Source of the DNA: Eukaryota sp. TZLM1-RC
Lineage: Eukaryota > Protista > Metamonada: BaSk clade
Direction: 5' to 3'
Length of the DNA: 64,000 nt
Assembly: GCA_040285825.1 (NCBI GenBank)
Contig: JAUPSS010000001.1
Span: 744,001 to 808,000, forward strand
The position numbers were made by a program, and so were the translations under genes. The notes under the pieces are model-generated. The model was given only the letters and a program-made list of their open reading frames with translations. It had not been told where the DNA came from and did no database searches. This document shows, one piece after another, positions 1 through 47,170 of the stretch (its first letter is position 1; every line of letters begins with the position of its first letter).

Positions 1-605
1 AATTTAGTCAGAGTGGAATTGCTCTCCAGAGCACGGGCGAGAGCACTAGCACCTTCAGAGGTAATGTTGTTGCCCCCAAGATCCAATTTAGTCAGAGTGG
101 AATTGCTCTCCAGAGCACGGGCGAGAGCACTAGCGCCTTCAGAGGTAATGTTGTTGCCCTCAAGATTCAATTCAGTCAGAGTGGAATTGCTCTCCAGAGC
201 ACGGGCGAGAGCACTAGCGCCTTCAGAGGTAATGTTGTTGAGACGAAGACCCAATCTAGTCAGAGTGGAATTGTTCTCCAAAGCACGGGCGAGAGAACTA
301 GCGCCTTCAGAGGTAATGTTGTTGGACTGAAGATGCAATATAGTCAGAGTGGAATTCCTCTCCAGAGCACGGGCGAGAGCACTAGCGCCTTCAGTGGTAA
401 TGTTGTTGCTCACAAGATACAATTTAGTCAGAGTGGAATTCCTCTCCAGAGCACGGGCGAGAGCACTAACGCCTTCAGAGGTAATTTTGTTGCCCGAAAG
501 ATACAATGTAGTCAGAGTGGAATTGCTCTCCAGAGCACGGGCGAGAGCACTAGCGTCTTCAGAGGTAATTTCGTTGTCCTGAAGATACAATTTAGTGATG
601 GAACC
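1..605 (-). repeat. 84-bp tandem coding repeat (28-aa RI/NLRC3-like LRR)
   Basis: Unit xLxLxxNNITSEGASALARALESNSTLT repeated every 84 nt. Confidence 0.95.
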
Positions 606-2123
606 ATTAACCAAACCCTCAACACCCTTCTTCACCCTATCCCCCAAACCATTCCAATTTACATTCGACTTGATGTCTTCCAAAATTTCTTCCTTTGATG
701 GAGGATGATGATCATCGATATTGTTCAAAGGTTGATTACAATGGCACTTTCTCAACAACGCTTCAAGGTCAGCAATTCTGCTTGCTAAGTCAGAATTAGT
801 TCTACTGAGTAGAGTATTTTGCTTTTCCAATTCATCAATGGTAGATCTAAGGTTGGCAATTTCTGTATCTTTCTCAGCAATACCGGCTTTGCTGGCATTT
901 AAAGCTTCTTCCATGGTGGCAATTCTAGCATCACGTTCTTCCAAAGAGTGACTGAGGTGTTGATTGGAGGCATTGATACCGGCCCTTTCTTCTTCCAACC
1001 GGGCAATTCTGGAATCCCGTTCTGTCAAATCGTTGGTGAGTTGTTGATTGGAAGCCTCCAAATCAGTAACATTCTTTCGTAGAGACTCGATTGTGGAGTT
1101 GGCAGATTGCAGTTGCGTTTGAACATCATTGTTAATATTAATAGGATTTTCATCACCTTCTTCAGCAAAGTCATCCAATTGATCCAAAACTAGAAGAACT
1201 TGAGCAATACTTGGTCTGGCAGCTGGATCTGAAGAGCAACATTGGGCGATTAATTCTTTGAGCACACTGGGAACATGTTCACCCAAAGCAAATGGTGTCT
1301 TAAAATACTTAGCTCCCATTATGGCAAGCTGATCCATATTGACAAATGGCCTATAATTACAAAGTAACTCACAAAGGATTATTCCAATTGCATAGATGTC
1401 TGAGGCAAGAGACAATTTGTTCTCAAACTGTTCCAAGGCTGCATACCGTGCTGTACATGATAGATTGGTAGCCGTGGAAGTCTTGGCAACAGTCCTGGAT
1501 GTTCCAAAATCGGCTAATTTGATTTGCCCATTGACAAAAAGAATGTTTTCGGGCTTGAGATCTCCGTGTGCAAGAAATTTGGAGTGCAGGAAACGGACTG
1601 CCTGGCAGATCTTCTTGGCAAACAAGAGACTTTGTTTACTCAACCTTGACGGCACTGGCAGAGAACCTTCAGCAAGTTCCATAATTATGGCAAGTCTGTC
1701 CATTAAGCTGACCAGACCAAAAACACGGAGGATAAAGGGATGATCAATCTTGGCCATGATACCAATCTCTTTCCTCAGTCGTTTCTTACCTTCTTCTGTG
1801 AGAGCAACAGTCTTGGCGGCGACGTCTGAATCAAACCAAGAAGCAGCAAACACCTGGGCATATCCTCCTTGACCAATCATGTGCAAAAGTTTGACCTGGT
1901 TAGAGGGAATGTGTACACAGAGGTCCTCCTTGCAAGAAGCTTTGGCTATATCGCGCAAACTGAGGTTGACTTCCGGTGACGGCAGGATATCTTCATTGCA
2001 GATCGGACAGGATTCCACAGCATCAGAGCATACACCGCATACACTATGGCGCTGACTGCAAACTACCAGTGGCACACGAGACTCTTCGTTGAAATCCATT
2101 GAACAATGTGGACACGAGTGCAT
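1..2123 (-). CDS. RING finger - protein kinase - coiled coil - LRR protein, copy 1 (3' end runs off the window start)
   Basis: ATG at 2123 (MHSCPHC...). Near-identical to ORF 36080..38461 through RING, kinase (GQGGYA, VAAK, HGDLKPEN, DFG) and stalk. At least 7 full 84-bp LRR units lie in 1-600. Absent from the ORF track, presumably because there is no stop in the window. Confidence 0.9.
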   Translation of the reverse strand, partial: MHSCPHCSMDFNEESRVPLVVCSQRHSVCGVCSDAVESCPICNEDILPSPEVNLSLRDIAKASCKEDLCVHIPSNQVKLLHMIGQGGYAQVFAASWFDSDVAAKTVALTEEGKKRLRKEIGIMAKIDHPFILRVFGLVSLMDRLAIIMELAEGSLPVPSRLSKQSLLFAKKICQAVRFLHSKFLAHGDLKPENILFVNGQIKLADFGTSRTVAKTSTATNLSCTARYAALEQFENKLSLASDIYAIGIILCELLCNYRPFVNMDQLAIMGAKYFKTPFALGEHVPSVLKELIAQCCSSDPAARPSIAQVLLVLDQLDDFAEEGDENPININNDVQTQLQSANSTIESLRKNVTDLEASNQQLTNDLTERDSRIARLEEERAGINASNQHLSHSLEERDARIATMEEALNASKAGIAEKDTEIANLRSTIDELEKQNTLLSRTNSDLASRIADLEALLRKCHCNQPLNNIDDHHPPSKEEILEDIKSNVNWNGLGDRVKKGVEGLVNGSITKLYLQDNEITSEDASALARALESNSTLTTLYLSGNKITSEGVSALARALERNSTLTKLYLVSNNITTEGASALARALERNSTLTILHLQSNNITSEGASSLARALENNSTLTRLGLRLNNITSEGASALARALESNSTLTELNLEGNNITSEGASALARALESNSTLTKLDLGGNNITSEGASALARALESNSTLTK

Positions 2124-3189
2124 TGCGAGAAAACAAGATGATTTCCAAAATTGCCAATGAATAATTTCTATTTCCCTTTGATCATCGTTACTAGGTGCCA
2201 TTTCACACAACATATTTCACATATTTGTTACATTCTATATGTGCCCCATATAGACCACCATTTATTACTCAATTTTGGGTATTTCGTGCTACATGAGAAT
2301 TCCCATAATGAAAATGACACTTTGAGCAAAGACTTCATACACCTGGACCCGTGTATTACAATCCAAGACTTCCCTCCAAGCAAACCTTCGGCCAATCACG
2401 CCTTTCCACAGCTCCTCCCGAATTCATAACATGCCTAAACAGTTCACAATTGAAAGGAATGGATGAAATACGGGATGAAGGAATAGATGTGCGAGATAGC
2501 TGAGAACGGTCCTTGTTGTCTATGTTCTTTCATTCATGAATGTATTGGAACAGAGAAAGGTGAAAAACGTTGAATCTGTCTTTTAACTACATTTTTTATT
2601 GTCAATTTCAAGTGGGCAAATTCCCAATACTGACACGATCAATTTTGTTGTCGATAATTTCAAATACTGTCTACTATTTACTGCTCAAATAATGAGGCCT
2701 TTAATTGCCACTCATTCTGGCTTCAGCAATTACTAACATATCGATTTGTGTTAGCTCATTTCTATAGAGTGAACTATTGAATGGGTTATTTTTGATAAAT
2801 AGTGTTGTCGCCCTAAGGCTTACATAATTTGATTAGAAAATGAATCAACTTTTTCTCATTCATATTATCTCAGACTTTCTTTAGACTTTCGGCAATGATA
2901 TAACTGAAGAAATGGGGAGATAGATCATCTTTGTATTTCGATTTTTGCCGTTAGTTAATTTAAGGTATTGTGTAAAGAAGCTTCAACAAAAACTGACAGT
3001 AATATTTGAAGATTTCGATCATGAAGTACGTTTTGACATGTCCAAACAAAAAATCCCGCTTTTGCAAATTTTTTACTGGATGTTTGTAATAGTTCTGCGT
3101 CTTGTTTAATTAATCATGTACGAACAAATGATAATTTGTTTCTAGAATACCCTTGCTTTTCATTATCTTTGTGTCTTTGATCTTTTATT

Positions 3190-3400
3190 TTGGCCTGATA
3201 ATCTTCCCCATGGTTTAATTTGTAAATGTGGGAAGACTGTCACTCCAACCCATTTATTTATTTGTAATCGTTTTATTACTTTTAGATCAAAAGTGGATGA
3301 TGCAGTCCGTGATCAGCTTTATTGTATGTGTAAACCCTACATGGTTGAATCCTTTTAGAACCATTGCTGCCAAATTTGGCTGACGCATCTGACAGAATTA
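3190..3400 (+). mobile_element. CRE-like non-LTR retrotransposon remnant (zinc finger / RLE start)
   Basis: Translates FWPDNLPHGLICKCGK..HLFICNRFITFRSKVDDAVRDQLYCMCK..FLEPLL, homologous to 26190-26375. Confidence 0.8.
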
Positions 3401-5913: not shown

Positions 5914-5989
5914 GGTTCCAAGGTGTAGTTGAGATATGATCTTTCGTCAACACCTGAACCTGAACGAAAAGTGAAAATCGAACATTGAA

Positions 5990-6570
5990 TATATGTATTT
6001 ATTGAATTTGCACACTTAATTTAATTAATTCATTACTAATGGGACGACTATCATTGAACCAAGATTTCCTCTACAAAATCTTGATCTGCTTGCTGTCTAG
6101 CTAAAGCTCCTCTAATTCGATTGAAAAACCGAGGTAATCTTTTAATAATGGCAAATTGAATCTCGTGATCGCCATAAAAAAATATCAAATCTTTCATTGT
6201 TTTTTCTTGCACCATTTTTTGGAAGTCATCCAAAAAAGTTTCTGCTTCAACTGATCATCTTCCATTTATCGAAAATGGGAAAGCAATAAAAACCAGCTGT
6301 GTATTTCTATCGACATTAGCCTCTTTAATATCTTTATCATATTTTCTATGTTTCTCCTTTGCTTTAAAATCCAGAGCAGCCACAGGATTAAGTTTTCTTC
6401 TGTGAACCAAGGTATCATTTGCAACATTACATGAGACAAAGTCAACAGTAGCTTCAGAATTATCAATCCAATCACGGTATACATCACCTCTATCATCAGA
6501 ACCAAAATTATTCAGAGAAAGTGTTTCCTTCAGCAGGGGCTCTTTGATACACGATATTCTTGCAGTTTGT
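5990..6570 (-). mobile_element. 3' fragment of a CRE-like retrotransposon (family C, RLE domain)
   Basis: Reverse complement of about 55300-55890; KEPLL..RGDVY..D..K..KY RLE motifs, then AATAAA and an AT tail. Confidence 0.85.
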
Positions 6571-6849
6571 TTTTATTGTCCAATTTATATTTTTTGGTTG
6601 AATCTTATCCTTTTCAAGTGTCAGCAAGAAGAATAGTTGCTATTGCTACTGACTGCATTTCACTGATGAAAAGATTACTCTTTCCAAAGGCTACAATAAA
6701 AAACTTTCTGCTAAAAAATCTCATCTTTGGGCGATTCATAACGTATAATAAAAGAAGCACCATGGGCGGTGGCTTGAAAGTGTTGCAAGATCAGTATTTC
6801 ATGTTGATTGTTAGTAGGAAAAATAGCCTTTTTTGTTATTAATAAAATT

Positions 6850-7200
6850 TATTTTTTATATAAAAATAAAGAAACAATAAAGCTCTACATGCTCAAAATT
6901 TGTCTCTCCACCATCGAAACAGTTAATTACTCAAGATTCTGAAAATCGACCAAAGGAAGATAGTGAATGAGACATATATTTGACCATTCCCTTCTGAATG
7001 TATAGAATTGTTTAACTTCCACACTTAAATGAACTCATAAATAATTAATTGAAAATTCAATCCTGTTCTGCCAGTAAATATGATTGGAAATATTTCCAGT
7101 TCTTTCCTTTACAAGTACGCAGAAATATTCTAGAAAGGCCTAAACAACCTTAACTAAAGAAACGAGCAAAGAAATAAAGGGACATGGATTTTATTGGACA
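6850..7200 (-). mobile_element. degraded 3' remnant of a CRE-like element
   Basis: Minus strand reads ..ERTGNISNHIYWQNRIEF.., like ERTGRIFNRVYWQNRIVF at about 26730-26785. Confidence 0.6.
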
Positions 7201-7255
7201 TGAGAATTGTTACTAATAGAAGGAATAGGTCAGCGTATTTAACAATTATGTGTTT

Positions 7256-8610
7256 TTGGAAGAGATTAATCATTTGAAAGCCAAAGTAGAATCTGATAAG
7301 GTCAAAATTGCTGACGTTACCAATCAATTAAATGAAATGACGGTCAAAAATCAGGAATTTTCAAAACTTTATGAAGAATTACAACGAAATTTCAACAAAG
7401 TTAGTGAAGAAAAACAAGACTTGGAAGCTCAAAATCAAGACATTTCCGATCAAACTCAAGAGCTTCGGTCAAATTTAACCTTGACTGAGGAACAGTGTTA
7501 AAATTTTAAGTCTCAGTTAGAAGAGATCACTTCGAAATATTCAGAATGTCAGAAAACTTGTCAGCTCAAAACTGACTCGTTGGTTAGATTAGAAACAAAT
7601 TATTACTTGGTTGTGCTAGAAAAAGAAAAATTAGGTAGTGTTATATCCGAAAGAGAACTTGAATTGGATCAAATTAAAGCAAAAATTAGTAGTAACTCGG
7701 AGAGTGAAAAGGAATTAATTCTGGAAAAGGAACAGTTAAACTCAATTACAGTAAAAATAATGAATTATCAAGTGCATTAGATGAGTTGGGTCTGTTGAAT
7801 AGTGAATTAAAAGAAGAAATTAAGAAAAATGAAAAAGATAATGGTGATAAAATTGAATTATTAAAAGAAAAAGATGCTGAAATTAATTCAAAGAATCAAG
7901 AATTATTGATGAAAAGTTCTAAATTTGCAGAATTAAATTCATCAATTGCTGAATTAACTACTCAAATCAAATCTCTAACGTCTGAAAAAGAATCACTGGA
8001 ATCAGAGATTATGTCACTTAAAGCCAGTAATTCGGAATTATCAACCGAGAATCAATCAAATTGTCAATCAATCAAGAATACTCAAGACTTGATTGCTGAA
8101 TTGAATACAGAAATTCAATTTAAGTCTACGTTAATTGTTGAATTGGAGTCAAAAATTACTCAGTTAGAGGAAACCATTCAGTCACAACGTTCAGAATTCA
8201 AAACATTTTCAACTTCTTTCAATGAGCTTTATGATCTTTTTTGTGATCTCTCCGAAAAATCTACCAATTATTCATCAGTTATTAAATCACTTTCTGTTTC
8301 CTTGAACCAATCAGAATCAGCTTTCAAGGATCTTTCTGACTCTCATGAAGAATTAGAAGGGCAATATGGGAAAATTAAAGAAATTAATGAAGAATTTGTT
8401 GCTATCATTGACTCTTTGAAAAATTGTGTAGCCGACCGATCGGAAATCATTGAAAATTTGGAAAAGGAAGTTTTGGGTTTAAAGGGAGAAATTTCAGAAA
8501 TGTCCACTAACAGTGATCAGTTGGCGGTCAATATTAATGAAAAAAACAATCAATTGATTCAAAAATTGAAACAAAAATTAATGGATAAGCAAAAGGAAAC
8601 GGTAGAGCTC
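7256..8610 (+). pseudogene. long coiled-coil protein fragment (stop at 7499, frameshifts, small deletion near 7750)
   Basis: E/K/L/N-rich heptad ORFs 7250..7501, 7580..7780 and 7786..8841. The same sequence occurs inverted in the terminal tandem array. Confidence 0.7.
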
Positions 8611-8755: not shown

Positions 8756-10759
8756 ATGGCCAAATATTGGCTGACATTTCATTGTTCGAATATTTGGTCT
8801 TTTTCAAAAGAAGATCAATCAGAGATCATTCAATCAATTGACACTTCCAACCAAAATTTTAGAATTTCTTTTAATGAATTCTATATATTCGAACTAGTCT
8901 TCATTCCTTGTCCAAATTTCTCAACTCTGAAACACGTCATTGACCAGAGCCTCACTTCCACAAAGCACAAGATCACTTTGTTTGGGGATAGAAGAGTTGT
9001 TCTGGTTAGCACAGAGGATGAATGTGTTCTAAAAAGAGGTACGATTTTTAATTGTAGAATTAAAGGGAAAAATAGAGAAATTACATTAGTTTTGGTTGAG
9101 GAATTCAATCCTGCTCTTGCGTATCCTGTTTGTTTTGCCGAAGAAAAGGCCCATGTTGATTTGGCTCTGCATTACTATGGAAATTTAGTCGAAAATTACA
9201 ATGATCAATTAATCCATTTCCTAATCAATTCCTATGACCTTCCCTCTCTTAGACGAAGATTCAACAATTGTTATAGGCTTGTGTTGTGCATCATATTAGC
9301 TCATGCTTTGAGAGTCGTGAATGCCAATGGTTATGCTCTGAATGGTGAATCCTTTATTAGATTGAATTGTAATTTGCTATGTAATTCTGTCTATTTTTTT
9401 GACGATTTTTTTAATCATGATTTTGATTTTGTTGCAACTAATGAGGTTAAACCGATCGAGTTTTTGGAAAAAGACTGTCTTGAATGTGCGATTGGCCTTG
9501 ATCCTACCACTAACCGTGTTGGTGTCCTCAACATGGCTAATGAGGAACATCCTGGTGGTGGTTATCTCACGGGTGCCAGTGCTCAGGAAGAATCACTTTT
9601 CAGAAGAACAACTCTAGGTGCTGCTTTGGATCCTGAACAGTATGGTGGACAGGTAGTTTCTGGCCAAAGGGTAGCATATCCATGGAAAACAGCTAAAATT
9701 GATGTTGTAGTTACCGAAAATGTGGAAATTTTCAAAACAACGGAAGCTACTGGATGTCAATTGCTTGAAAAACCACAAAGAGTTACCATTATAAGTACTG
9801 CTGCTCCTCAAAATCCACAAAAAAAGGAAGTCGAAAACTTTGGTGAAGACTATGCTCATTTTGATGATTTGCAATTACTATACAAGAGATGGACTTGTGT
9901 CTTTTTAGCTGCCATTAAACACAGAATTACTCATTTAGTGATTTGCCCTCTTGGTTGTGGAGCTTTCAAAAACCCTATTCCTGGTGCAATGACTGTTTTA
10001 TCATTTGTACTTTCCATTTTCCACAAGTTTTTTGATTCAATTATATTTAGTGGATTTGGGGATTGTCTAGCACAATGCCAAGATTTAATTAAATACGATT
10101 TAATTCAAAATTCTCGAAATTTTATGCTTCCATGTCAGGATTTGCTCTTTCCCTGCCAACGTGTTGAAGAAAGAGATCATATTTCAAAATTTCACCATGT
10201 CCCACGTTGCCCCTTTAAAAATTGTAACCAGTTGGCTTCACTATCTCATCGAACATTTTTTCAACATTTTACATCCACAAAATTGTTTCAAAAACCAAGA
10301 TTTTCCTCTATTACTAAAAGTGCTCCTAATATAAACTCTGAACTACCCCAATGTCCTAATCCTTATACCTGCGAGTATTACTATGTGGATCATATGGGAA
10401 AGACCTCCGAGGGAGCCAAGCATTTAAGGGGGTTTAAACATATTTGTCGATATTCAGGATTTTGTAAAGATGTGGAAAACGAGGAACACTGCAGACTATT
10501 TGACCACGTTGAGCTGGAAGTATGTGAACATGGGGTAAGTTGTGAAGGTCTTAAGGATCCTCTTCATCGCTTCACTTTTTCCCATGAACCTATACCAGTG
10601 ATTCCTTATAAGTGCAAGTTTGGCGACAAGTGTGATAGGAAAAACGACCCTTCTTGTTATAGAAAATATGGGCATTGGAATGTCAACCAAGATCCTGAAT
10701 TTGTCAAGAAATCTTTTTTGAAGAAAATTGTCAAAAGTTGTCTCATTCTTGACTTATAA
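8756..10759 (+). CDS. bacterial-type poly(ADP-ribose) glycohydrolase (DUF2263/TIGR02452) with about 6 C-terminal PBZ-like CCHH zinc fingers; true start uncertain (likely frameshift near 8800)
   Basis: VLNMANEEHPGGGYLTGASAQEESLFRRT (GGG-x6-QEE signature), LGCGAFKNP; C-terminal repeats such as CRYSGFCKDVENEEHCRLFDH and CEHGVSCEGLKDPLHRFTFSH. Confidence 0.85.
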   Translation: MAKYWLTFHCSNIWSFSKEDQSEIIQSIDTSNQNFRISFNEFYIFELVFIPCPNFSTLKHVIDQSLTSTKHKITLFGDRRVVLVSTEDECVLKRGTIFNCRIKGKNREITLVLVEEFNPALAYPVCFAEEKAHVDLALHYYGNLVENYNDQLIHFLINSYDLPSLRRRFNNCYRLVLCIILAHALRVVNANGYALNGESFIRLNCNLLCNSVYFFDDFFNHDFDFVATNEVKPIEFLEKDCLECAIGLDPTTNRVGVLNMANEEHPGGGYLTGASAQEESLFRRTTLGAALDPEQYGGQVVSGQRVAYPWKTAKIDVVVTENVEIFKTTEATGCQLLEKPQRVTIISTAAPQNPQKKEVENFGEDYAHFDDLQLLYKRWTCVFLAAIKHRITHLVICPLGCGAFKNPIPGAMTVLSFVLSIFHKFFDSIIFSGFGDCLAQCQDLIKYDLIQNSRNFMLPCQDLLFPCQRVEERDHISKFHHVPRCPFKNCNQLASLSHRTFFQHFTSTKLFQKPRFSSITKSAPNINSELPQCPNPYTCEYYYVDHMGKTSEGAKHLRGFKHICRYSGFCKDVENEEHCRLFDHVELEVCEHGVSCEGLKDPLHRFTFSHEPIPVIPYKCKFGDKCDRKNDPSCYRKYGHWNVNQDPEFVKKSFLKKIVKSCLILDL

Positions 10760-14496: not shown

Positions 14497-14509
14497 AATA
14501 GTTTTCTTC

Positions 14510-31000: not shown

Positions 31001-32799
31001 GCAGAAAAAGATAGGACACAACGGATAATCTTATTGACACCAGATGATATGAAATTACAATCTTTTTTGATAAGCGTTTGCTGTGAGCCATAAAAATTGT
31101 AAAATAATACTTAACATGCTCAACACATTTTAGCTGCGATAAGGGTACGTTGTACTCTTTAATTTTGCTCTTTTCATCAAAGGAGATCGGAATTTTGCAA
31201 ACATTGTGAAATAGTGATGAATTTTGCATAAATTCCTATTTTAACTCGAATTTGACAAAACAAAATTTATAAGTAAAACCAGTCTATAAAGGATTATGAA
31301 GTGGCAATTTTGATAGCTCTTCATAAAGATCGTTCTCTGGTTAACTGAATATTCTTGAAACACTTAGAATAAAATACTAGAACACTAGAACAATAAAATA
31401 CGTTCAATTAAGAGCATGTTATTAAACAATTTGTCTTGTTCACGATCGAAGAACAATACAGGTTTTGCAACAATTCTAAGTGATCAAAAAATCTGATTCG
31501 AATTTTAAACCGGTATAAACTCTGCAACAGTTTCCGTTAGTATTTTCAAGTATTTTTGGAGTTGTAAGACAATACTGTTTTAGTTTTAAGCAAACAAATT
31601 TCTATAACCGTGTGATATCCCATATTCCTTCTTTTAAATTATTAGTAAATTTCCAGAAGCAAATTGAAAAGGAAGATAGAAGATAGAGGAGTTCCCTGTG
31701 CTGTAACACGTATAATATTTTGAACAATCTACAGCCTTGCAAGATTCACAAACAAAGGCCAAGTCAATTACAAAGTTCCTCAAGAGTTTAAAAACATTTC
31801 CACACATGCGTCTGGAAACAATAATTGTTTTAGTCTCGATTCTGATGATCAAGAGATACCTTTGCTTTTATTCATTGTGATGATGTTTTACTTAGTGAAG
31901 ACCGAAAAAGAGGAAAATATACTGCAATATTAAATGATTTAAATAAGAATCTTTACTCAAAGTTTTCGTTTGTTCCTTTTGTCTTTTCGATTTTTGGCAA
32001 CATTGGACAGTTCGCCTTGGATTTTATCAATGATTTTTGGTAATTTGTGTCGTTCAAGTAGTAACAATTTTGCAGGGAATTTATGGAAGAATCGTATCAT
32101 TTTCGCTTTGTACAGAAGTGTTCCCAAATAGTTTTGTTTCTTGTGTGTTTTAGTTTCTTTTGATTTGACTTGATTATTCGCAGAAAATAAATATATATTT
32201 GTTAAAAAATTACAGTAACAATTTCTCACAGAAGGAAATTTTTGCGAAGAACATGCTAACTCAAGATCCACAAATATCGAAAATGCCCAATCTTCAGAAT
32301 CACCCTCATTGATCAAGCACCATGCAGTCAGACCCGGAAAGTGGGAAAGGAAATGCTGGCTCCCACTTTGGGGTCCCCTTTTGCCAGAAGTGCAGCAGAT
32401 CCCCTTTTGCTTACCCATCGGTACTAGTTGTTTCTCATTTATTCCATAAAGATTAGAACTTCTTTGTTTTGCGTGGTAGATTACATAAGGCTTCAAAAGT
32501 AGCATTCATTCGTCTAAAAGAGGGTATGATTATGACCCAACCATCATTTTGAACAAAGGAAAAGCACAGAGGTTGTTGGCTTTAAGTGTCATCAGCTTCA
32601 TTGATGTCAGAGCTTTTTTACGGTGCTCTCAAAAGACTACATTGGGTTTGGAGGATTGATGAAGGGAATCGAAGTTGGGAATTCAGCTTTTGTAAACTCA
32701 ACAGGAGATTTCTTTTACAATGGCTGTGGTTATATACAGTATCGTATTTCTAGTACTCATTTTCAGCAGCATCTTCTATCATGTTTTCTTTTATTTTGA

Positions 32800-34510: not shown

Positions 34511-35895
34511 GAAAAAGATAGGACACAACGGATAATCTTATTGACACCAGATGATATGAAATTACAATCTTTCTTGATAAGCGTTTGCTGTGAGCCATAA
34601 AAATTGTAAAATAATACTTAACATGCGCAACACATCCTACCTACGATAAGGGTACGTTGTACTCTTTAATTTTACTCTTTTCATCAAAGGGGATCGGAAT
34701 TTTGCAAACATTGTGAAATAGTGATGAATTTTGCATAAATTCCTATTTTAAATCGAATTTGACAAAACAAAATTTATAAGTAAAAGCAGTCTATAAAGGA
34801 TTATGAAGTGGCAATTTTGATAGCTCTTCATAAAGATCGTTCTCTGGTTAACTGAATATTCTTGAAACACTTAGAATAAAATACTAGAACACTAGAACAA
34901 TAAAATACGTTCAATTAAGAGCATGTTATTAAACAATTTGTCTTGTTCACGATCGAAGAACAATACAGGTTTTGCAACAATTCTAAGTGATCAAAAAATC
35001 TGATTCGAATTTTAAACCGGTATAAACTCTGCAACAGTTTCCGTTAGTATTTTCAAGTATTTTTGGAGTTGTAAGACAATACTGTTTTAGCTTTAAGCAA
35101 ACAAATTTCCATGTCCGTGTGATATCCCATATTCCTTCTTTTAAATTATTAGTAAATTTCCAGAAGCAAATTGAAAAGGAAGGTAGAAGATAGAGGAGTT
35201 ACCTGTGCTGTAACACGTATAATATTTTGAACAATCTAAAGCCTTGCAAGATTCACAAACAAAGGCCAAGTCAATTACGAAGTTCCTCAAGAGTTTAAAA
35301 ATTTTCCACACATGCGTCTGGAAACAATAATTGTTTTAGTCTCGATTCTGATGATCAAGAGATACCTTTGCTTTTATTTATTGTGATGATGTTTTACTTA
35401 GTGAAGACCGAAAAAGAGGAAAATACACTGCGATATTAATGATTTAAATAAGAATCTTTACTCAAAGTTTTCGTTTGTTACTTTTGTCTTTTCGATTTTT
35501 GGCAACATTGGACAATCCGCCTTGAATTTTATCAATGATTTTTGGTAATTTGTGTCGTTCAAGTAGTAACAATTTTGCAGGGAATTTATGGAAGAATCGT
35601 ATCATTTTCGCTTTGTACAGAAGTGTTCCCAAATAGTTTTGTTTCTTGTGTGTTTTAGTTTCTTTTGATTTGACTTGATTATTCGCAGAAAATAAATATA
35701 TATTTGTTAAAAAATTACAGTAACAATTTCTCACAAAAGGAAATTTTTGCGAAGAACATGCAAAATCAAGATCCACAAAAACCTAAAATGCCCAATCTTC
35801 AGAATCACCCTCATTGATCAAGCACCATGCAGTCAGACCCGGAAAGTGGGAAAGGAAACGCTGGCTCCCACTTTGGGGTCCCCTTTTGCCAGAAG

Positions 35896-35969
35896 TGCAG
35901 CAGATAGGATTCGAACCCTGTTGCCAAAGCAGAGAACGAAGAGCAAACCCACTGGACTACGATGTTGGC
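35896..35969 (-). ncRNA. tRNA-derived Pol III element (degenerate tRNA / SINE head)
   Basis: A box TAGTCCAGTGG and B box GGTTCGAATCC at tRNA spacing; no canonical cloverleaf; followed by a GC-rich hairpin body. Confidence 0.55.
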
Positions 35970-36079: not shown

Positions 36080-38461
36080 TTAAACGACAATGCGAAGAGA
36101 AGGACGATTAGATGCTACTTGTCGAAGTTTGGATTCGGTTGGATTGCTAATGTTGTTGCCCCCAAGATACAATGTAGTCAGAGTGGAATTGCTCTCCAGA
36201 GCACGGGCGAGAGCACTAGCGCCTTCAGAGGTAATTTTGTTGAACCCAAGATCCAATTCAGTCATAGTGGAATTGCTCTCCAGAGCACGGGCGAGAGCAC
36301 TAGCGCCTTCATCGGTAATGTTGTTGGACCCAAGATTCAATGTAGTCAGAGAGGAATTGCTCTCCAGAGCACGGGCGAGAGCACTAAAGCCTTCAGAGGT
36401 AATTTTGTTGAACCCAAGATCCAATTCAGTCATAGTGGAATTGCTCTCCAGAGCACGGGCGAGAGCACTAGCGCCTTCATCGGTAATGTTGTTGGACCCA
36501 AGATTCAATGTAGTCAGAGAGGAATTGCTCTCCAGAGCACGGGCGAGAGCACTAAAGCCTTCAGAGGTAATGTTGTTGTAGTTGAGATTCAATTCAGTCA
36601 CAGTGGAATTGCTCTCCAGAGCACGGGCGAGAGCACTAAAGCCTTCAGAGGTAATGTTGTTGTCCTCAAGATACAATTCGGTCAGAGAGGAATTGCTCTC
36701 CAGAGCACGGGCGAGAGCACTAGCGCCTTCAGAGGTAATGTTGTTGTGCCGAAGATACAATATAGTCAGAGTGGAATTGCTCTCCAGAGCACGGGCGAGA
36801 GCACTAAAGCCTTCAGAGGTAATGTTGTTGTCCTCAAGATACAATATAGTCAGAGTGGAATTGCTCTCCAGAGCACGGGCGAGAGCACTAGCGCCTTCAG
36901 AGGTAATGTTGTTGTCCTCAAGATACAATTCAGTGATAGAACCATTAACCAAACCCTCAACACCCTTCTTCACCTCATCTCCCAATCCATTCCAATTTAC
37001 ATTCGACTTGATGTCTTCCAAAATTTCTTCTTTAGATGGAGGATGATGATCATCGATATTGTTCAAAGGTTGATTACAATGGCACTTTCTCAACAATGCT
37101 TCAAGGTCAGCAATTCTGCTTCCTAAATCAGAATTAGTTCTACTGAGTAGAGTATTTTGATTTTCCAATTCATCAATGGTAGATCTAAGGTTGGCAATTT
37201 CTGTATCTTTCTCAGCAATACCGGCCTTGCTGGCATTTAAAGCTTCTTCCATGGTGGCAATTCTAGCATCACGTTCTTCCAAAGAGTGACTGAGGTGTTG
37301 ATTGGAGGCATTGATACCGGCCCTTTCTTCTTCCAACCGCGCAATTCTGGAATCCCGTTCAGTCAAATCGTTGATGAGTTGTTGATTGGAAGCCTCCAAA
37401 TCAGTAACATTCTTTCGTAGAGACTCGATTGTGGAGTTTGCAGATTGCAGTTGCGTTTGAACATCATTGTTAATACTAACAGAATTTTCATCACCTTCTT
37501 CAGCAAAGTCATCCAATTGATCCAAAACTAGAAGAACTTGAGCAATACTTGGTCTGGCAGCTGGATCTGAAGAGCAACACTGGGCGATTAATTCTTTGAG
37601 CACACTGGGAACGTGTTCACCCAAAGCAAATGGTGTCTTAAAATACTTAGCTCCCATTATGGCAAGCTGATCCATATTGACAAATGGCCTATAATTACAA
37701 AGTAACTCACAAAGGATGATTCCAATTGCATAGATGTCTGAGGCAAGAGACAATTTGTTCTCAAACTGTTCCAAGGCTGCATACCGAGCTGTACATGATA
37801 GATTGGTGGCCGTGGAAGTCTTGGCAACAGTCCTGGATGTTCCAAAATCGGCCAATTTGATTTGCCCATTGACAAAAAGAATGTTTTCGGGCTTGAGATC
37901 TCCATGTGCAAGTGATTTGGAGTGCAGGAAACGGACTGCCTGGCAGATCTTCTTGGCAAACAAGAGACTTTGTTTAGTCAATCTTGACGGCACTGACAGA
38001 GAACCTTCAGCAAGTTCCATAATTATGGCGAGTCTGTCCATTAAGCTGACCAGACCAAAAACGCGGAGGATAAAGGGATGATCAATCTTGGCCATAATAC
38101 CAATCTCTTTCCTCAGTCGTTTCTTACCTTCTTCTGTGAGAGCAACAGTCTTGGCGGCGACGTCTGAATTAAACCAAGAAGCGGCAAACACCTGTGCATA
38201 TCCTCCTTGTCCAATCATGTGCAAAAGTTTGACCTGGTTAGAGGGAATGTGTACACAGAGGTCCTCCTTGCAAGAAGCTTTGGCTATATCGCGCAAACTG
38301 ATGTTGACTTCCGGTGACGGCAGGATATCTTCATTGCAGATCGGACAGGATTCCACAGCATCAGAGCATACACCGCATACACTATGGCGCTGACTGCAAA
38401 CAACCAGTGGCACACGAGACTCTTCGTTGAAATCCATTGAACAATGTGGACACGAGAGCAT
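36080..38461 (-). CDS. RING finger - non-RD protein kinase - coiled coil - 10x LRR protein, copy 2 (intact, 793 aa)
   Basis: C3HC4-like CPHC..C..H..CGVC..CPIC; kinase GQGGYA / VAAK / HGDLKPEN / DFG / DIYAIG; 84-bp LRRs in about 36140-36940. Confidence 0.92.
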   Translation of the reverse strand: MLSCPHCSMDFNEESRVPLVVCSQRHSVCGVCSDAVESCPICNEDILPSPEVNISLRDIAKASCKEDLCVHIPSNQVKLLHMIGQGGYAQVFAASWFNSDVAAKTVALTEEGKKRLRKEIGIMAKIDHPFILRVFGLVSLMDRLAIIMELAEGSLSVPSRLTKQSLLFAKKICQAVRFLHSKSLAHGDLKPENILFVNGQIKLADFGTSRTVAKTSTATNLSCTARYAALEQFENKLSLASDIYAIGIILCELLCNYRPFVNMDQLAIMGAKYFKTPFALGEHVPSVLKELIAQCCSSDPAARPSIAQVLLVLDQLDDFAEEGDENSVSINNDVQTQLQSANSTIESLRKNVTDLEASNQQLINDLTERDSRIARLEEERAGINASNQHLSHSLEERDARIATMEEALNASKAGIAEKDTEIANLRSTIDELENQNTLLSRTNSDLGSRIADLEALLRKCHCNQPLNNIDDHHPPSKEEILEDIKSNVNWNGLGDEVKKGVEGLVNGSITELYLEDNNITSEGASALARALESNSTLTILYLEDNNITSEGFSALARALESNSTLTILYLRHNNITSEGASALARALESNSSLTELYLEDNNITSEGFSALARALESNSTVTELNLNYNNITSEGFSALARALESNSSLTTLNLGSNNITDEGASALARALESNSTMTELDLGFNKITSEGFSALARALESNSSLTTLNLGSNNITDEGASALARALESNSTMTELDLGFNKITSEGASALARALESNSTLTTLYLGGNNISNPTESKLRQVASNRPSLRIVV

Positions 38462-39394: not shown

Positions 39395-40664
39395 CTATTT
39401 AACTGGTGGTGTGGTTAATTCAATCAAAGTATCTGGATCTCTATATATCTGAATGATTTCCTTGTAAATTGATTCTTCAATGACCAAATCTGAGATACTC
39501 CTGGCCAGGAACAAATCCTCACAGATTTCAAGTAATTTATCCACATTTGGGAGAGCCGAAACAAAAATTTGGGATTTGCTGTCCGAAAATGAAAGTCGAA
39601 CAAACCTACCAACACCAATCACAATTGATAGATACAATCCAATCAAACCCCCCCTGGCATAAGCACCAAGTGCAGCGATCGATTCTAAACTATAAGTATA
39701 CATATAGAATGGTTCTCTTGAATCAGCATCCTTGATCAACCAATAAGTCTGTCCGTCACGTTCTCTGCGCTGAATGAGAGTATCCTCACGTTGATCAGAA
39801 AAGATTGGTGATTCGGCCAGAGGAATTAATGCAGCTCTTGGAAGTAAAGGTATTGTTACTTCTTCTAAATCACCAGAAAATAACTTGGCCAACTCTAAAC
39901 AATGTTCATGATCTAAATTGAACGAGTACCATCCCTTTGCTGTCCTCCTATCGCTTGGATAGTGTCTGTTAAACATGAAAGCTTATGCATGAAAGCTGGG
40001 CCAAGTAGTTGGAATTGCGATGTAAATAAAGAAATCACAGGTGACGTGATTGATGGGGAAGGTGATTTGATGAAGGAGGTAGAAATGATTAATTGAATAA
40101 TCAAAGGTAATAAAATTAAAGCATGCTCTAGACAAAAAACAGAGTCACAATGGTTGAGTGAGGGTAATGCAAATATTTTAAATTTGGGACTTTTAATAAA
40201 ATCTTGAGGCAATGCTATTGATAAATAAGTAATTGTTAATCGAGTTATTGTTAAAATTGAGGTTATTAGATAAAGCAGCTTCCTACTAGTTCTGTTTGTG
40301 TGTTTGATTAGAGTTAAATCAAAAATACAAATTATTAACGGAATTAGATTTAAAATATATGGTTGGAATGTTGAAATTACTAGGATGAAAACGACTAAAT
40401 TTTTGATAATTGAAGGTCTTGAAAGGGAAATGAAGCGCTAATTAAAGTCAATTCCCTTAAGAAAAACAAAAGATAATACTGGAAAAATAAGAAAAACAAA
40501 TCGATCAAATAAAAGGTCAAAATGATAACGTGATATCACGTCAACATAATGAGCTGGGAAAAGTGTGGATAAATAATCCATTACTGGGGTGTATTGGATT
40601 ATAAATAAACTAGCAATGACCAAAACCAAACTAGAAAATCCGATAAAGTCAATTAAAGAATTTC
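39395..40664 (-). pseudogene. Piezo fragment with internal ~2.85-kb deletion
   Basis: 39395-39974 matches 48762-49341; 39984-40664 matches about 52189-52870. Confidence 0.85.
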
Positions 40665-42479
40665 CAGAGCCTCACTTCCACAAAGCACAAGATCACTTTG
40701 TTTGGGGATAGAAGAGTTGTTCTGGTCAGCACAGAGGATGAATGTGTTCTAAAAAGAGGTACGATTTTTAATTGTAGAATTAAAGGGAAAAATAGAGAAA
40801 TTACATTAGTTTTGGTTGAGGAATTCAATCCTGCTCTTGCGTATCCTGTTTGTTTTGCCGAAGAAAAGGCCCATGTTGATTTGGCTCTGCATTACTATGG
40901 AAATTTAGTCGAAAATTACAATGATCAATTAATCCATTTCCTAATCAATTCCTATGACCTTCCCTCTCTTAGACGAAGATTCAACAATTGTTATAGGCTT
41001 GTGTTGTGCATCATATTAGCTCATGCTTTGAGAGTCGTGAATGCCAATGGTTATGCTCTGAATGGTGAATCCTTTACTAGATTGAATTTTAATTTGCTAT
41101 GTAATTCTGTCTATTTTTTTGACGATTTTTTTAATCATGATTTTGATTTTTTTGCAACTAATGATGTTAAACCGATCGAGTTTTTGGAAAAAGACTGTCT
41201 TGAATGTGCGATTGGCCTTGATCCTACCACTAACCGTGTTGGTGTCCTAAATATGGCTAATGAGGAACATCCTGGTGGTGGTTATCTCACGGGTGCCAGT
41301 GCTCAAGAAGAATCACTTTTCAGAAGAACTACTCTGGGTGCTGCTTTGGATCCTGAACAGTATGGTGGACAGGTAGTTTCTGGCCAAAGGGTAGCATATC
41401 CATGGAACACAGCTAAAATTGATGTTGTAGTTACCGAAAATGTGGAAATTTTCAAAACAACTGAAACTACTGGATGTCAATTGCTTGAAAAACCACAAAG
41501 AGTTACCATTATAAGTACTGCTGCTCCTCAAAATCCACAAAAAAAGGAAGTTGAAAACTTTGGTGAAGACTATGCTCATTTTGATGATTTACAATTACTA
41601 TACAAGAGATGGACCTCTGTCTTTTCAGCTGCCATTAAACACGGAATTACTCATTTAGTGATTTGCCCTCTTGGTTGTGGAGCTTTCAGAAACCCTATTC
41701 CTGGTGCAATGACTGTTTTATCATTTGTACTTTCCATTTTCCACAGGTTTTTTGATTCAATTATATTTAGTGGATTTGGGGATTGTCTAGCACAATGCCA
41801 AGATTTAATTAAATACGATTTAATTCAAAATTCTCGAAATTTTATGCTTCCATGTCAAGATTTGCTCTTTCCCTGCAAACGTGTTGATGAAAGAGATCAT
41901 ATTTCAAAATTTCACCATGTTCCACGTTGTCCCTTTAAAAATTGTAACCAGTTGGCTTCACTATCCCATCGAACATTTTTTCAACATTTTACATCCACAA
42001 AATCGTTTCAAAAACCAAGATCTTCCTCTATTACTAAAAGAGCTCCTAAAATAAACTCTGAACTACCTCAATGTCCTAATCCTTATACCTGCGAGTATTA
42101 CTATGTGGATCATATGGGAAAGACCTCCGAGGGAGCCAAGCATTTAAGGGGGTTTAAACATATTTGTCGATATTCAGGATTTTGTAAAGATGTGGAAAAT
42201 GAGGAACACTGCAGACTATTTGACCACGTTGAGCTGGAAGTATGTGAACATGGGGTAAGTTGTGAAGGTCTTAAGGATCCTCTCCATCGCTTCACTTTTT
42301 CCCATGAACCTATACCAGTGATTCCTTATAAGTGCAAGTTTGGCGACAAGTGTGATAGGAAAAACGACTCTTCTTGTTATAGAAAATATGGGCATTGGAA
42401 TGTCAACCAAGATCCTGAATTTGTCAAGAAAACTATTTTGAAGAAAATTGTCAAAAGTTGTCTCAAACTTGACTTATAA
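40665..42479 (+). pseudogene. 5'-truncated copy of PARG-PBZ (catalytic domain and fingers still in an open frame)
   Basis: Near-identical to 8945-10759; joined directly to the Piezo fragment. Confidence 0.8.
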
Positions 42480-42681
42480 ATAAAGTTCATTAACGAATTT
42501 TTCTCTACTAATGCTAGTGTCTAGTCATCAAGTCTATTGAATTTATGGTGTCAAAATGTTGATTGATTGAATCATCTTGATTGATTGAATCACTTGTAGT
42601 TACTTTAACAGCACACCATTTTCTTTACACTTCCACATTCCAATGGAATCAAACCACAATGGAATCAAACCACAAAAACAA

Positions 42682-43417
42682 CTATATCTCACAACACCAC
42701 CCTTTGAATGCCAGACTCGTTCTCTGTTCGAAATGTTTCTTAGCATCCTCAAGCAACTCGTTTACATTTCCGAAGTGAGGTAAATGTGTAAGTAAAAGAT
42801 GATTTACTGACGCTTTTTGAGCAATTCTCGCTGCTTCTGTACTTGTTAAGTGTCCATAAGGCACTGCATCTTGCCAAGGATAGAAGCTCGCCTCGCAAAT
42901 GAACAAATCTACATCACTCACAAACTCTGCCAATGTCTCATGATAGGCAGTGTCTCCTAAATAAGCTACTGATTTGGATCCACAAGTAGCCTTAATGGCA
43001 AATGATTTAATTGAGTGGACATTTTCATGAAATTCCAACTCAAACGGACCTATTGTTTTTTCGGCTTTGCGGGTCATATGGAACAGTGTCAACAAATGGA
43101 GGTTTCTTTAACTTTGACAGTGTATCCTGATCATACGATGGGCCATATACTTTGAGTGGAGAATTCACCTTGCCTAGCTGTCTTTCCACTAGGCTAGCGT
43201 ATTGTAGTGGACCTACGTCAGCAATATGATCATGGTGGTAGTGGGAGATGACAACTGCATGCAGTTCGGTGTTAGAAACGAAGTGCAACATGTTGGACAA
43301 TACACCACTACCACAATCAATAAGAACATTGAAACCATCGTGCTGGAGCAAATAACCAGAGGTAGCGTCATTAGCTTTAGGATATCCTGCCCAGTGGCCT
43401 ATAACAGTTAGTTTCAT
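42682..43417 (-). CDS. MBL-fold hydrolase copy (frameshift in a T run near 43058; possible sequencing error)
   Basis: Near-identical to 10952-11686. Confidence 0.8.
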
Positions 43418-43896
43418 GAGGAATTCAATCAAACCACTGTTATTTATTTTATGAAAAGACTAATTGAATATAACACCCACTCACACTCGCATTAATATAT
43501 ATAGGATAATGGCATGAACCATTCTAATGGTTTTTGATATTTTGAGGTACACATACTCTAGGAATTGATCTAATCGCCATCATAGAGTTATCTCTGCTGT
43601 GTGGATGTTGGTATAACTACTTTGACAGGAAAAATTGATATTAGACAGTTGTATTTATAATGGTGATCTTGTGTGTAAAGACATAATTCAAGTTCAGTGA
43701 AGCATTGTATGATATTCAATTATAGAAATTCAATTTATTAATGAAATAAACATTTATGAATAAGTTTCATCTTCCAAATATGCTCTACCCAATGCCTTTG
43801 TTTGTCTCTCAAAAGTTAGGGCAACCAATGGGGTAATGTCTTGTTTGTGATATGATGAGCGGGATGCAAAATGGAATTCTCCTTTATGGGTAATTT

Positions 43897-44819: not shown

Positions 44820-44834
44820 AATAGTTTTCTTCTT

Positions 44835-45578: not shown

Positions 45579-45830
45579 AATTTTGTTTCTTGTGTGTTTT
45601 AGTTTCTTTTGATTTGATTCTGCGTAGAAAACGAATATTTTTGTTAAAATTACAGTAACAATTTCTCACAAAAGGAAATTTTTGCGAATAACATGCTAAA
45701 TCAAGATCCACAAAAACCTAAAATGCCCAATCTTCAGAATCACCCTCATTGATCAAGCACCATGCAGTCAGACCCGGAAAGTGGGAAAGGAAATGCTGGC
45801 TCCCACTTTGGGGTCCCCTTTTGCCAAAAG

Positions 45831-45904
45831 TGCAGCAGATAGGATTCGAACCCTGTTGCCAAAGCAGAGAACGAAGAGCAAACCCACTGGACTACGATGT
45901 TGGC
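45831..45904 (-). ncRNA. tRNA-derived Pol III element, copy 2
   Basis: Identical 74 nt to 35896-35969. Confidence 0.55.
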
Positions 45905-46014
45905 AGTTGTTTATGTTGTTTTTTCTAATTTGTATTAGGTTTTGATTTGTATTGATGTTGGACGATTTTATAGTTGGTTTTGTATTCATGGAAAAAGTAA
46001 TTGAAATGTGTTTA

Positions 46015-47170
46015 TTAAACGAAAAGTCGGAGAGAAGGACGATTAGATGCTACTTGTCGAAGTTTGGATTTGGTTGGATTGCTAATGTTGTTGTACTGAA
46101 GATGCAATATAGTCAGAGTGGAATTGCTCTCCAGAGCACGGGCGAGAGCACTAGCGCCTTCAGAGGTAATGTTGTTGTACCGAAGATGCAATGTAGTCAG
46201 AGTGGAATTGCTCTCCAGAGCACGGGCGAGAGCACTAGCGCCTTCAGAGGTAATGTTGTTGGACCAAAGATGCAATTCAGTCAGAGTGGAATTGTTCTCC
46301 AGAGCAAGGGCGAGAGCACTAGCGCCTTCATCGGTAATGTTGTTGCCCCCAAGATGCAATCCAGTCAGAGTGGAATTGCTCTCCAGAGCACGGGCGAGAG
46401 CACTAGCGCCTTCAGAGGTAATGTTGTTTTGCCGAAGATTCAATTCAGTGATGGAACCATCAACCAAACCCTCAACACCCTTCTTCACCTTATCCCCCAA
46501 TCCATTCCAATTTACATTCGACATAATATCTTCCAAAATTTCTTCTTTAGATGGAGGATGATCATCATCGATATTGTTCAAAGGTTGATTACAATGGCAC
46601 TTTCTCAACAACGCTTCAAGGTCAGCAATTCTGCTTCCTAAATCAGAATTAGTTCTACTGAGTAGAGTATTTTGATTTTCCAATTCATCAATGGTAAATC
46701 TAAGGTTGGCAATTTCGGCATTTTTCTGCGCAATAGTGGCATTGTAGGCTTGCTCCACAGCATTCTTTTCCTTTTCCAACCTGGCAATTCCAGCATCACG
46801 TTCCTCCAAAATTCTGTTGAGTTGTTGATTTATGGATTCAAGGTCGGTTATTTGTTTCTGAAGGGATTCAATTGAAGAGTTGGCTGGCTGCAGTTGGTAT
46901 CTATCCAATTCTTCAATGTTTAATCTTGCATTTCGCACACCTTGAAGAACACTTTCAATTTTGGGACGGTTCTCAGCCTTAGGACTAACCATGCTTGCAA
47001 TTAATGGCCTCCATAATGTCGGTAGCTTATCCAAATTAATCAGTGCAGCACCATGGGAAGAAATTCGACTAACCTGTAGTTGAGCAGGATTCGTAACTAC
47101 TTTTGAAGGATCCGTATTGGCTAAAATTCCCCAAAAGAGCACACCCAAAGAAAAGATGTCTACTTCAGAA
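46015..47170 (-). pseudogene. 5'-truncated kinase - coiled coil - 5x LRR gene, copy 3, with a different kinase C-lobe
   Basis: Begins at kinase subdomain IX (SEVDIFSLGVLFW..RPKIESVL). Stalk (from EIANLR) and cap are shared with copies 1 and 2. Confidence 0.8.

What the first reader, a model, noticed from the sequence alone, without database searches (positions are those of the whole stretch)
1..47170. Kinase-LRR receptor family (RING + non-RD kinase in full copies) with hypervariable, reshuffled 84-bp LRR cassettes: candidate diversified immune or recognition system in a protist
Seen: copies 1 and 2 are nearly identical over RING, kinase and stalk, yet no LRR strand motif is shared between any copies. 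Copy 1: KLYLQDN, TLYLSGN, KLYLVSN, ILHLQSN, RLGLRLN, ELNLEGN, KLDLGGN. Copy 2: ELYLEDN, ILYLEDN, ILYLRHN, ELYLEDN, ELNLNYN, (TLNLGSN, ELDLGFN)x2, TLYLGGN. Copy 3: ELNLRQN, GLHLGGN, ELHLWSN, TLHLRYN, ILHLQYN. Repeat numbers differ (at least 8, 10 and 5). The remaining framework is almost nucleotide-invariant, including silent sites, and variation concentrates in four codons of xLxLxxN. Known: those positions line the ligand-binding concave face of RI-class LRRs; the same pattern (homogenised repeats with hypervariable surface codons) defines Podospora HNWD and Ectocarpus LRR-ROCO receptors; non-RD kinases (here HGD) are enriched among innate-immune receptors. Inference: a cytosolic sensor-kinase-E3 ligase whose specificity is reprogrammed by repeat shuffling or conversion.
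Basis: partly seen in the sequence, partly recalled or inferred. Interest (0 to 1): 0.85.

Follow-up and report, generated by a model that had tools for sequence, protein, structure and literature searches.

The report
Rapidly diversifying protist sensor-like gene family
A free-living, bacteria-eating protist carries a family of kinase genes whose repeat units are kept almost identical except at four surface positions that selection drives to differ, the pattern seen in fungal and algal non-self sensors; what they bind, and whether they are expressed, is untested.

Summary
The window is Skoliomonas litria (metamonad), contig JAUPSS010000001.1. Across 115 LRR units from 13 genes, codons 3, 5, 7 and 8 of the 84-bp unit are hypervariable, and this repeats in 81 units outside the window. 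pN/pS there is 6 (bootstrap 4.7-9.1); the kinase gives 0.17. Third-position changes at those codons are mostly amino-acid-changing (14:4, p=0.001), which points to selection and against a mutator or DGR. Units are homogenised across three architectures (two unrelated RING-kinases and an RCC1 protein on another contig), with one clear inter-contig conversion tract. Three corrections: strand motifs ARE shared family-wide (5 of 19 window motifs); copy 3 is a truncated member of an RD-kinase type; and the four codons are almost unlinked, so exchange works below the 84-bp unit, not only by whole cassettes. A conserved tRNA-like Pol III element follows every complete array. Best reading: a cytosolic recognition kinase/E3 family that evolves like Podospora HNWD but is no NLR. 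Immune function is inferred; no reads could be checked. The scan noted this pattern before on other DNA of this genome.

The parts
1..2123 (-). Copy 1, type-A RING-kinase-coiled coil-LRR gene; open frame runs off the window start
1998..2114 (-). Copy 1 C3HC4 RING-spaced zinc finger
   Evidence: same as copy 2
1194..1889 (-). Copy 1 protein kinase domain, HGD catalytic loop at 1560-1568
1..599 (-). Copy 1 LRR array, 7 whole 84-bp units plus 11 bases of an 8th; units 2-4 match units 5-7 of paralogue P9112_013270
36080..38461 (-). Copy 2, complete single-exon 793-aa type-A gene; exact NCBI protein of Eukaryota sp. TZLM1-RC
38336..38452 (-). Copy 2 RING-spaced finger (residues 4-42, C3HC4 pattern; no Pfam call)
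37532..38227 (-). Copy 2 kinase (Pkinase E 7e-45), HGD at 37898-37906, under purifying selection (pN/pS 0.17)
37088..37504 (-). Copy 2 coiled-coil stalk; its distal part is shared with type-B genes
36938..37051 (-). Copy 2 N-cap before the array
36083..36937 (-). Copy 2 LRR array, 10 units, ribonuclease-inhibitor-class fold; units 6-7 and 8-9 are a recent 168-bp duplication
35785..35969 (-). Conserved tRNA-like element after copy 2: A box 35949-35959, B box 35907-35917, T4 run ending 35785
46015..47170 (-). Copy 3: 5'-deleted type-B gene (kinase C-lobe end, stalk, 5 LRR units); lacks RING and catalytic loop; deletion junction at 47170/47171
46018..46452 (-). Copy 3 LRR array, 5 units, frame intact
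45720..45904 (-). Conserved tRNA-like element after copy 3
32280..32400 (-). Headless partial copy of the element at the junction of a 3.5-kb tandem duplication

Best explanation
A young, lineage-specific family of soluble cytoplasmic recognition proteins in an arms race with an outside partner (most likely viruses or bacteria that get into the cell). Shown: (1) each gene ends in a ribonuclease-inhibitor-class LRR solenoid of 5-17 identical-scaffold units; (2) recombination and conversion homogenise the scaffold within genes, between paralogues and between unrelated architectures; (3) selection keeps amino-acid variants at four strand/loop codons (about 11 bits per unit) and more weakly at codons 10 and 13; (4) those variants occur in nearly all combinations inside the unit. 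Inferred: all units form one gene pool in which point mutations at the binding face are kept, mixed by short conversion tracts, and dealt into arrays by unequal crossing-over; the concave face binds a foreign protein or surface; binding clusters coiled-coil-linked subunits, which switches on the kinase and lets the RING tag the target or a partner with ubiquitin, as LRSAM1 does.
For: Entropy and hold-out test. pN 0.51 vs pS 0.08 at the four codons, gene-bootstrap ratio 6.2 (4.7-9.1); framework 0.5; kinase 0.17. Fixed-site codon model omega 17, 2dlnL 327, inflated by recombination; a floor that allows free recombination is about 4. Third positions 14 non-synonymous to 4 synonymous against 39:61 expected, p=0.001. 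Silent divergence among units (0.058-0.067) is below that of the kinase part of the same genes (0.096). Nearest unit lies in another gene for 56 of 103 units. P9112_013270 cap and 3' spacer differ by 3/184 bases from an RCC1-LRR gene on another contig and by 23-31 from its own paralogues. Model pLDDT 86, strand covers unit positions 3-7; NOD2, NLRP3 and RNase inhibitor match at TM 0.78-0.89. No N-terminal signal or membrane helix by hydropathy. A related MLKL_N-like/kinase/LRR subfamily exists in the genome (below the Pfam cut-off). Precedents: PMC1805685, PMC3341825, PMC4986451, PMC8567218.
Against: One assembly from one culture. The RING of type A is supported by spacing only. Type-B kinases are HRD and lack the glycine-rich loop; RCC1-LRR genes lack a kinase, so there is no single output. 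The same pattern arises in PRDM9 from self-inflicted target loss (PMC3890296). Tree-based omega is unreliable for concerted repeats (same paper). No pathogen of Skoliomonas was identified here.
Confidence: 0.6

Rival explanations
1. Same diversification mechanism, internal opponent: the LRRs recognise products of the genome's own mobile elements or selfish loci and send them for ubiquitin-dependent removal, a conflict system in the manner of PRDM9 or KRAB zinc fingers.
For: The loci are crowded with non-LTR retrotransposon RT fragments of several families. PRDM9 shows the same signature with 84-bp units and no pathogen (PMC3890296). All selection tests fit this equally well.
Against: No direct link to any element was found. 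RI-class LRR faces rich in Tyr, Asn, Asp, Gly, Ser, Trp fit protein binding in general and do not point to transposons.
Confidence: 0.14
2. Kin or self/non-self recognition between cells of the species (allorecognition, mating or cannibalism control), as with Podospora het-d/het-e, where the repeats read a polymorphic self protein.
For: The closest evolutionary precedent, HNWD, was defined by allorecognition (PMC1805685, PMC12222747). Four selected codons per repeat in both.
Against: The proteins are cytosolic and no cell fusion is known to me for this flagellate; at least 12 paralogues on one contig look more like a repertoire than an allelic series; no polymorphic partner identified.
Confidence: 0.1
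3. A dedicated, programmed diversifier acts on these arrays (very short templated exchange started at the downstream Pol III element, or a DGR-like mutator), giving variation within a clone.
For: Linkage between codons only 4-6 bases apart is close to zero; all four combinations of two-step alleles occur in 2 or more genes for every site pair tested; the element follows all 12 complete arrays, is five times less diverse than the spacer, and partial copies mark duplication junctions.
Against: DGR-type adenine mutagenesis fails: the silent A in codon 3 is invariant in 115/115 units and no template-like unit was found. Synonymous change is not clearly raised at the four codons. All alleles connect by single-base steps. 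The cap and spacer between element and array are more diverged (0.11) than the units, so there is no conversion gradient from the element. No orphan donor cassettes in about 270 kb read. The older P9112_000490 LRR gene has variable strand codons without the element.
Confidence: 0.1
4. Assembly or polishing artefact, or neutral decay of a repeat-rich region.
For: R9.4 Nanopore assembly with Illumina polishing can mix near-identical repeats; reads could not be checked; the region is full of broken duplicates, and most arrays were found through annotated proteins.
Against: Variation is codon-position specific and amino-acid biased; 0 stop codons where 8.6 are expected if bases combined freely (partly ascertained); 101 of 102 unit junctions are exactly 84 bp apart; kinases are under purifying selection. 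Artefact could still affect the low-linkage result more than the selection result.
Confidence: 0.04

Closest known systems
Podospora anserina HNWD/NWD family (het-d, het-e) and fungal NLRs with high internal conservation (PMC1805685, PMC4986451, PMC12222747)
   Same: Near-identical repeats under concerted evolution within and between loci and across different N-terminal domains; variable repeat number; four positively selected codons per repeat on the binding face; intact repeats at broken loci.
   Different: LRR instead of WD40/ANK/TPR (no LRRs were found in fungal NLRs); no NACHT or NB-ARC domain; RING plus kinase output; unicellular metamonad; function unproven.
Ectocarpus LRR-ROCO and LRR-kinase genes (PMC3341825)
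   Same: LRR domain is a recombination hot spot between otherwise near-identical paralogues; intra- and intergenic exchange; diversifying selection on the LRR.
   Different: There each LRR is a 72-nt exon shuffled through introns; here arrays are single-exon 84-bp tandem units of the RI class, with no ROC-COR domain.
Tetrahymena 90-bp-exon LRR genes (PMC6564038)
   Same: Species-specific protist LRR expansion, some fused to kinases, ectopic recombination, LINE-rich surroundings, suggested recognition role.
   Different: Exon-per-repeat structure and thousands of genes there; intronless arrays with frozen scaffold and four hypervariable codons here.
LRSAM1 (PMC8567218)
   Same: Soluble LRR + coiled coil + RING protein; LRR binds the target, RING ubiquitinates; a model for how the output could work.
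   Different: Conserved single gene, reverse domain order, SAM domain, no kinase, no hypervariable array.
PRDM9 zinc-finger minisatellite (PMC3890296)
   Same: 84-bp coding units, concerted evolution, positive selection at a few contact codons, copy-number variation.
   Different: Binds DNA, single locus, driven by hotspot erosion; unrelated fold.
Lamprey VLR assembly and diversity-generating retroelements (own knowledge)
   Same: Combinatorial LRR binding faces (VLR); variation at codon positions 1-2 in a fixed frame (DGR).
   Different: Genes here are complete in the genome with no donor cassette library seen; the silent adenine test rejects DGR mutagenesis.

Membership tests
HNWD-like concerted-repeat receptors (works like) | High internal conservation of repeats (>85% identity over 100 aa or more) | tested here: met
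   89-91% DNA match within arrays; framework pN 0.03, pS 0.06
HNWD-like concerted-repeat receptors (works like) | Concerted evolution within and between loci | tested here: met
   Unit pS below kinase pS; units mixed across genes and architectures; inter-contig tract
HNWD-like concerted-repeat receptors (works like) | Positive selection at a few codons per repeat on the interaction face | tested here: met
   strand positions from model; concave orientation from known LRR geometry, not measured
HNWD-like concerted-repeat receptors (works like) | Repeat-number polymorphism between individuals | not testable with these tools
   One assembly; number varies between paralogues, 5-17
NLR / STAND receptors (membership) | Central NACHT or NB-ARC domain | tested here: not met
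   Pfam finds kinase, coiled coil and LRR only
ROCO proteins (membership) | ROC-COR tandem | tested here: not met
Ectocarpus/Tetrahymena exon-shuffled LRR genes (membership) | One LRR per exon | tested here: not met
   Continuous open frames; gene length equals protein length x3
Non-RD receptor kinases of innate immunity | No Arg before the catalytic Asp | tested here: inconclusive
   Met for type A (HGD), not met for type B (HRD) carrying the same LRR module
Non-RD receptor kinases of innate immunity | Signal peptide, membrane helix, extracellular LRR | tested here: not met
   Highest hydropathy window lies inside the kinase fold; LRR is C-terminal
RING E3 ligases | C3HC4 cross-brace ligand spacing | tested here: met
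   Pattern match in type A; Pfam RING hits in type B, E 5e-8; none for type A
RING E3 ligases | Ubiquitin ligase activity | not testable with these tools
   needs assay
RI-class LRR | 28-residue repeat, strand-helix solenoid | tested here: met
Diversity-generating retroelement | Template repeat and adenine-specific mutagenesis | tested here: not met
   Silent A invariant in 115/115; no template-like unit; nearby RTs are non-LTR type
VLR-type somatic assembly | Incomplete germline gene plus donor LRR cassettes | tested here: not met
   All arrays in about 270 kb are attached to genes or gene fragments; whole genome not scanned

The most novel reading that the evidence does not exclude
Skoliomonas runs an active repertoire generator: very short templated exchanges between 84-bp units recombine four contact codons almost independently within a clone, and the Pol III element behind every array controls either the exchange or which receptor is expressed (as RUF6 does for Plasmodium var genes). 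This would be an anticipatory, adaptive-like recognition system in a single-celled free-living eukaryote.
Probability: 0.1. Interest if true: 0.9.

Novelty: new variant of a known kind. Interest (0 to 1): 0.6.

Why it matters
How free-living protists detect intruders is largely open. This family gives concrete, quantified candidates in a deep-branching, culturable metamonad and extends the homogenised-repeat/hypervariable-codon strategy, known from fungi and brown algae, to RI-class LRRs with a kinase/RING output and no NOD or ROC domain. One repeat pool serves three unrelated effector architectures. The near-free mixing of codons only 4-6 bases apart makes a question testable with existing reads: how fine-grained and how fast is repeat exchange? 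The frozen scaffold with four free positions is also a natural binder library.

Tried and rejected
Afterwards I aimed searches and the fold at the LRR part beside that stretch; for openness, two whole-window scans (ARAGORN, Rfam) did include it, and four paralogous proteins were looked up by id. Completing copy 1 beyond the window start failed: five neighbouring ORFs are not in the collection. DGR-type mutagenesis rejected. A mutator limited to codon positions 1-2 rejected. Raised silent mutation at the four codons not supported. Excess of shared two-unit blocks between genes not significant overall (2 observed, 1.1 expected, p=0.29), so whole-cassette exchange rests on single clear cases. The 3' element has no Rfam or ARAGORN match and is not unusually structured (z -0.44). 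No close relative outside S. litria in two protein searches, including the two other Skoliomonas genomes, within the length and candidate limits of that tool. The genome paper has no mention of leucine-rich repeats or kinases.
Full report
Source. The 793-aa protein of copy 2 is an exact NCBI protein of Eukaryota sp. TZLM1-RC, i.e. Skoliomonas litria (name link from own knowledge and the genome paper 10.1101/2023.05.03.539051), and places the window at 744001-808000 of JAUPSS010000001.1. The best hits are ten paralogues on the same 4-Mb contig, then RCC1-LRR proteins and four-helix-bundle/kinase/LRR proteins on other contigs; everything outside this genome is generic NLRC3-like LRR similarity. 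The assembly is R9.4 Nanopore with Illumina polishing. The paper's main text has no hit for leucine or kinase.

Observation. Copies 1 and 2 are 97.3% identical before the array. Architecture of type A: C3HC4-spaced finger (residues 4-42), kinase with HGD (79-310), coiled coil (320-458), N-cap, LRRs, C-cap. Copy 3 belongs to a second type: from 47170 downward it is 96-98% identical to type-B genes, starting at about base 768 of their coding sequence, so it has lost RING and catalytic loop. Full type-B genes have a Pfam-recognised RING and an HRD kinase only distantly related to type A, joined to the same distal stalk, cap and array. The non-RD argument therefore covers only part of the family.

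Data set. I fetched 11 loci and extracted every unit without regard to annotation: 115 units in 13 arrays of 5-17 units, 12 on contig 1 (653-1277 kb) and one RCC1-LRR gene on another contig. No orphan cassette and no unit with a stop was found; 101 of 102 junctions are exactly 84 bp.

Hypervariability and selection. Amino-acid entropy is 2.06, 2.39, 3.22 and 3.38 bits at codons 3, 5, 7 and 8; next come codons 13 (1.42) and 10 (1.31); structural Leu and Asn are fixed. The 81 internal units outside the window repeat this, so it is not a post-hoc choice. pN is 0.51 and pS 0.08 at the four codons; the framework has pN 0.03 and pS 0.06. The gene-bootstrap ratio is 6.2 (4.7-9.1). A fixed-site codon model on the unit tree gives omega 17 (12, 13, 24, 22 per codon; 2dlnL 327); recombination inflates this, and PMC3890296 warns against tree methods for such repeats. 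A floor that lets codons recombine freely is 4.7 changes per non-synonymous site against 1.1 per silent site, about 4. The kinase of nine type-A copies has pN/pS 0.17.

Selection or mutator. Third bases of the four codons look frozen, which could suggest a position-specific mutator. The exceptions decide it: 14 of 18 distinct third-base variants change the amino acid, where 39% are expected (p=0.001). All four T-A starts at codon 7 end in C and avoid the stop; 8.6 stops are expected if bases combined freely and none occurs (partly ascertained by protein search). All alleles connect through single-base steps. The silent A of codon 3 is invariant in 115 of 115 units and no template-like unit exists in the loci, which rejects DGR mutagenesis.

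Homogenisation and exchange. Silent divergence between units is 0.067 within genes and 0.058 between genes, below the 0.096 of the pre-LRR part of the same genes; it is 0.095 between kinase genes and the RCC1 gene, whose N-terminal parts are unrelated. The nearest unit is in another gene for 56 of 103 units; gene labels change 60 times on the unit tree (12 if arrays were private, 72 if shuffled), so there is only mild within-gene clustering, from recent tandem duplications such as copy 2 units 6-7/8-9. Clear transfers: copy 1 units 2-4 equal units 5-7 of P9112_013270 within 2-4 bases each; and the last units, cap and 3' spacer of P9112_013270 come from the RCC1-LRR family (3/184 differences against 23-31 to its paralogues). 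Five of 19 window motifs recur in other genes; no sharing among three copies is what chance gives (0.6 expected).

Below the cassette. The 115 units carry 91 different four-codon combinations. Association between codons is weak (z 0.8-1.9 for most pairs, 4.4 for adjacent 7-8) and fades within a few bases. For every pair of sites tested, all four combinations of alleles that differ by two bases occur in two or more genes. Codon 3 uses only six codons and leaves 12 of 14 one-step neighbours unused, which argues for reuse of standing alleles by short-tract exchange over repeated fresh mutation; on a single tree the four codons need 154 changes against a minimum of 43. Heavy parallel selection or polishing errors are not excluded.

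Structure. The copy 2 array folds without an alignment at pLDDT 86; each strand covers unit positions 3-7 with position 8 directly after. Matches are NOD2, NLRP3, RNase inhibitor and axonemal LRR proteins (TM 0.78-0.89 for the best). That positions 3, 5, 7, 8 face the concave ligand surface follows from known LRR geometry; it was not measured. Diversity is about 11 bits per unit. Hydropathy shows no signal or membrane segment.

The 3' element. About 110 bases after the stop of all 12 complete arrays, including the RCC1 gene, lies a 185-base, 50% GC element with Pol III A and B boxes and a T4 run; diversity is 0.020 against 0.11 in cap and spacer. It is neither a tRNA nor an Rfam family and is not unusually structured. 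Headless copies sit at tandem-duplication junctions. It is absent behind the older LRR gene P9112_000490. RUF6 beside Plasmodium var genes is a precedent for a regulatory role; a SINE or LINE head is as plausible. Earlier scan notes had pointed to it.

Mechanism and comparison. The evolutionary mechanism matches Podospora HNWD point by point: concerted evolution within and between loci, four selected codons, intact repeats at broken loci. It is no NLR or ROCO, and unlike Ectocarpus and Tetrahymena its repeats are not exons. For output, LRSAM1 shows that a soluble LRR-coiled coil-RING protein can bind intruding bacteria and ubiquitinate them; non-RD kinases are mostly tied to innate immunity, but that holds for type A only. 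I put defence against outside intruders at 0.6, conflict with mobile elements at 0.14, kin recognition at 0.1, a programmed diversifier at 0.1, artefact or decay at 0.04.

Limits. Copy 1 could not be completed. The scan had noted this pattern in other windows of this genome, with one follow-up on the RCC1-LRR genes; those notes were used as leads only.

Verdict. Real, strongly selected and well explained by a known evolutionary strategy in a new protein architecture and lineage: new variant of a known kind, interest 0.6.

Noticed in passing
window 35785-35969 (-), 45720-45904 (-), 32280-32400 (-); L002-L011: tRNA-like Pol III element after every complete array, five times less diverse than the spacer; headless copies at duplication junctions; no Rfam match.
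   Followed up: partly
window 8756-11701, 39395-43432, 48762-54469; L002, L005-L008: The kinase-LRR gene is amplified in a block with a Piezo 3' part, a metallo-beta-lactamase-fold gene (Apyc1-like Pfam hit) and a microbial-type PARG; many copies are broken. A nucleotide-signal hydrolase and an ADP-ribose eraser beside candidate sensors may be chance or a defence cluster.
   Followed up: no
P0118, P0013 (L012:10001-13060): Older subfamily with an MLKL_N-like four-helix bundle (E 2.6e-5, below cut-off), kinase and related LRR units (about 60% DNA identity) that also vary most at codons 7, 8 and 13; no Pol III element.
   Followed up: partly
window 28903-32400 and 32409-35905: 3.5-kb tandem duplication (98%) that starts inside the element and holds a decayed non-LTR reverse transcriptase on the minus strand.
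   Followed up: partly
window 23628-26908 (+): Non-LTR retrotransposon RT split over two ORFs; young copies (90-98%) in L004, L008, L009, L010.
   Followed up: no
window 55515-64000: About seven tandem copies of a 1.2-kb unit at 96-97% identity, missed by TRF because of the period; pieces recur inverted at 5989-7853.
   Followed up: no
L007 and L003, coding bases 673-856: P9112_013185 and P9112_013428 share a diverged 200-base block in the kinase C-lobe around the substrate-binding region, a conversion tract from an unseen donor.
   Followed up: no
window 47171-47309 (-), 2192-2330 (-): A 139-base sequence lies upstream of both type-A and type-B genes and ends at the deletion junction of copy 3; different sequences follow its end in different copies.
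   Followed up: no
P0008, P0010, P0016: Type-B kinases lack the glycine-rich loop and have DFD for DFG; possibly weak or pseudo-kinases.
   Followed up: no
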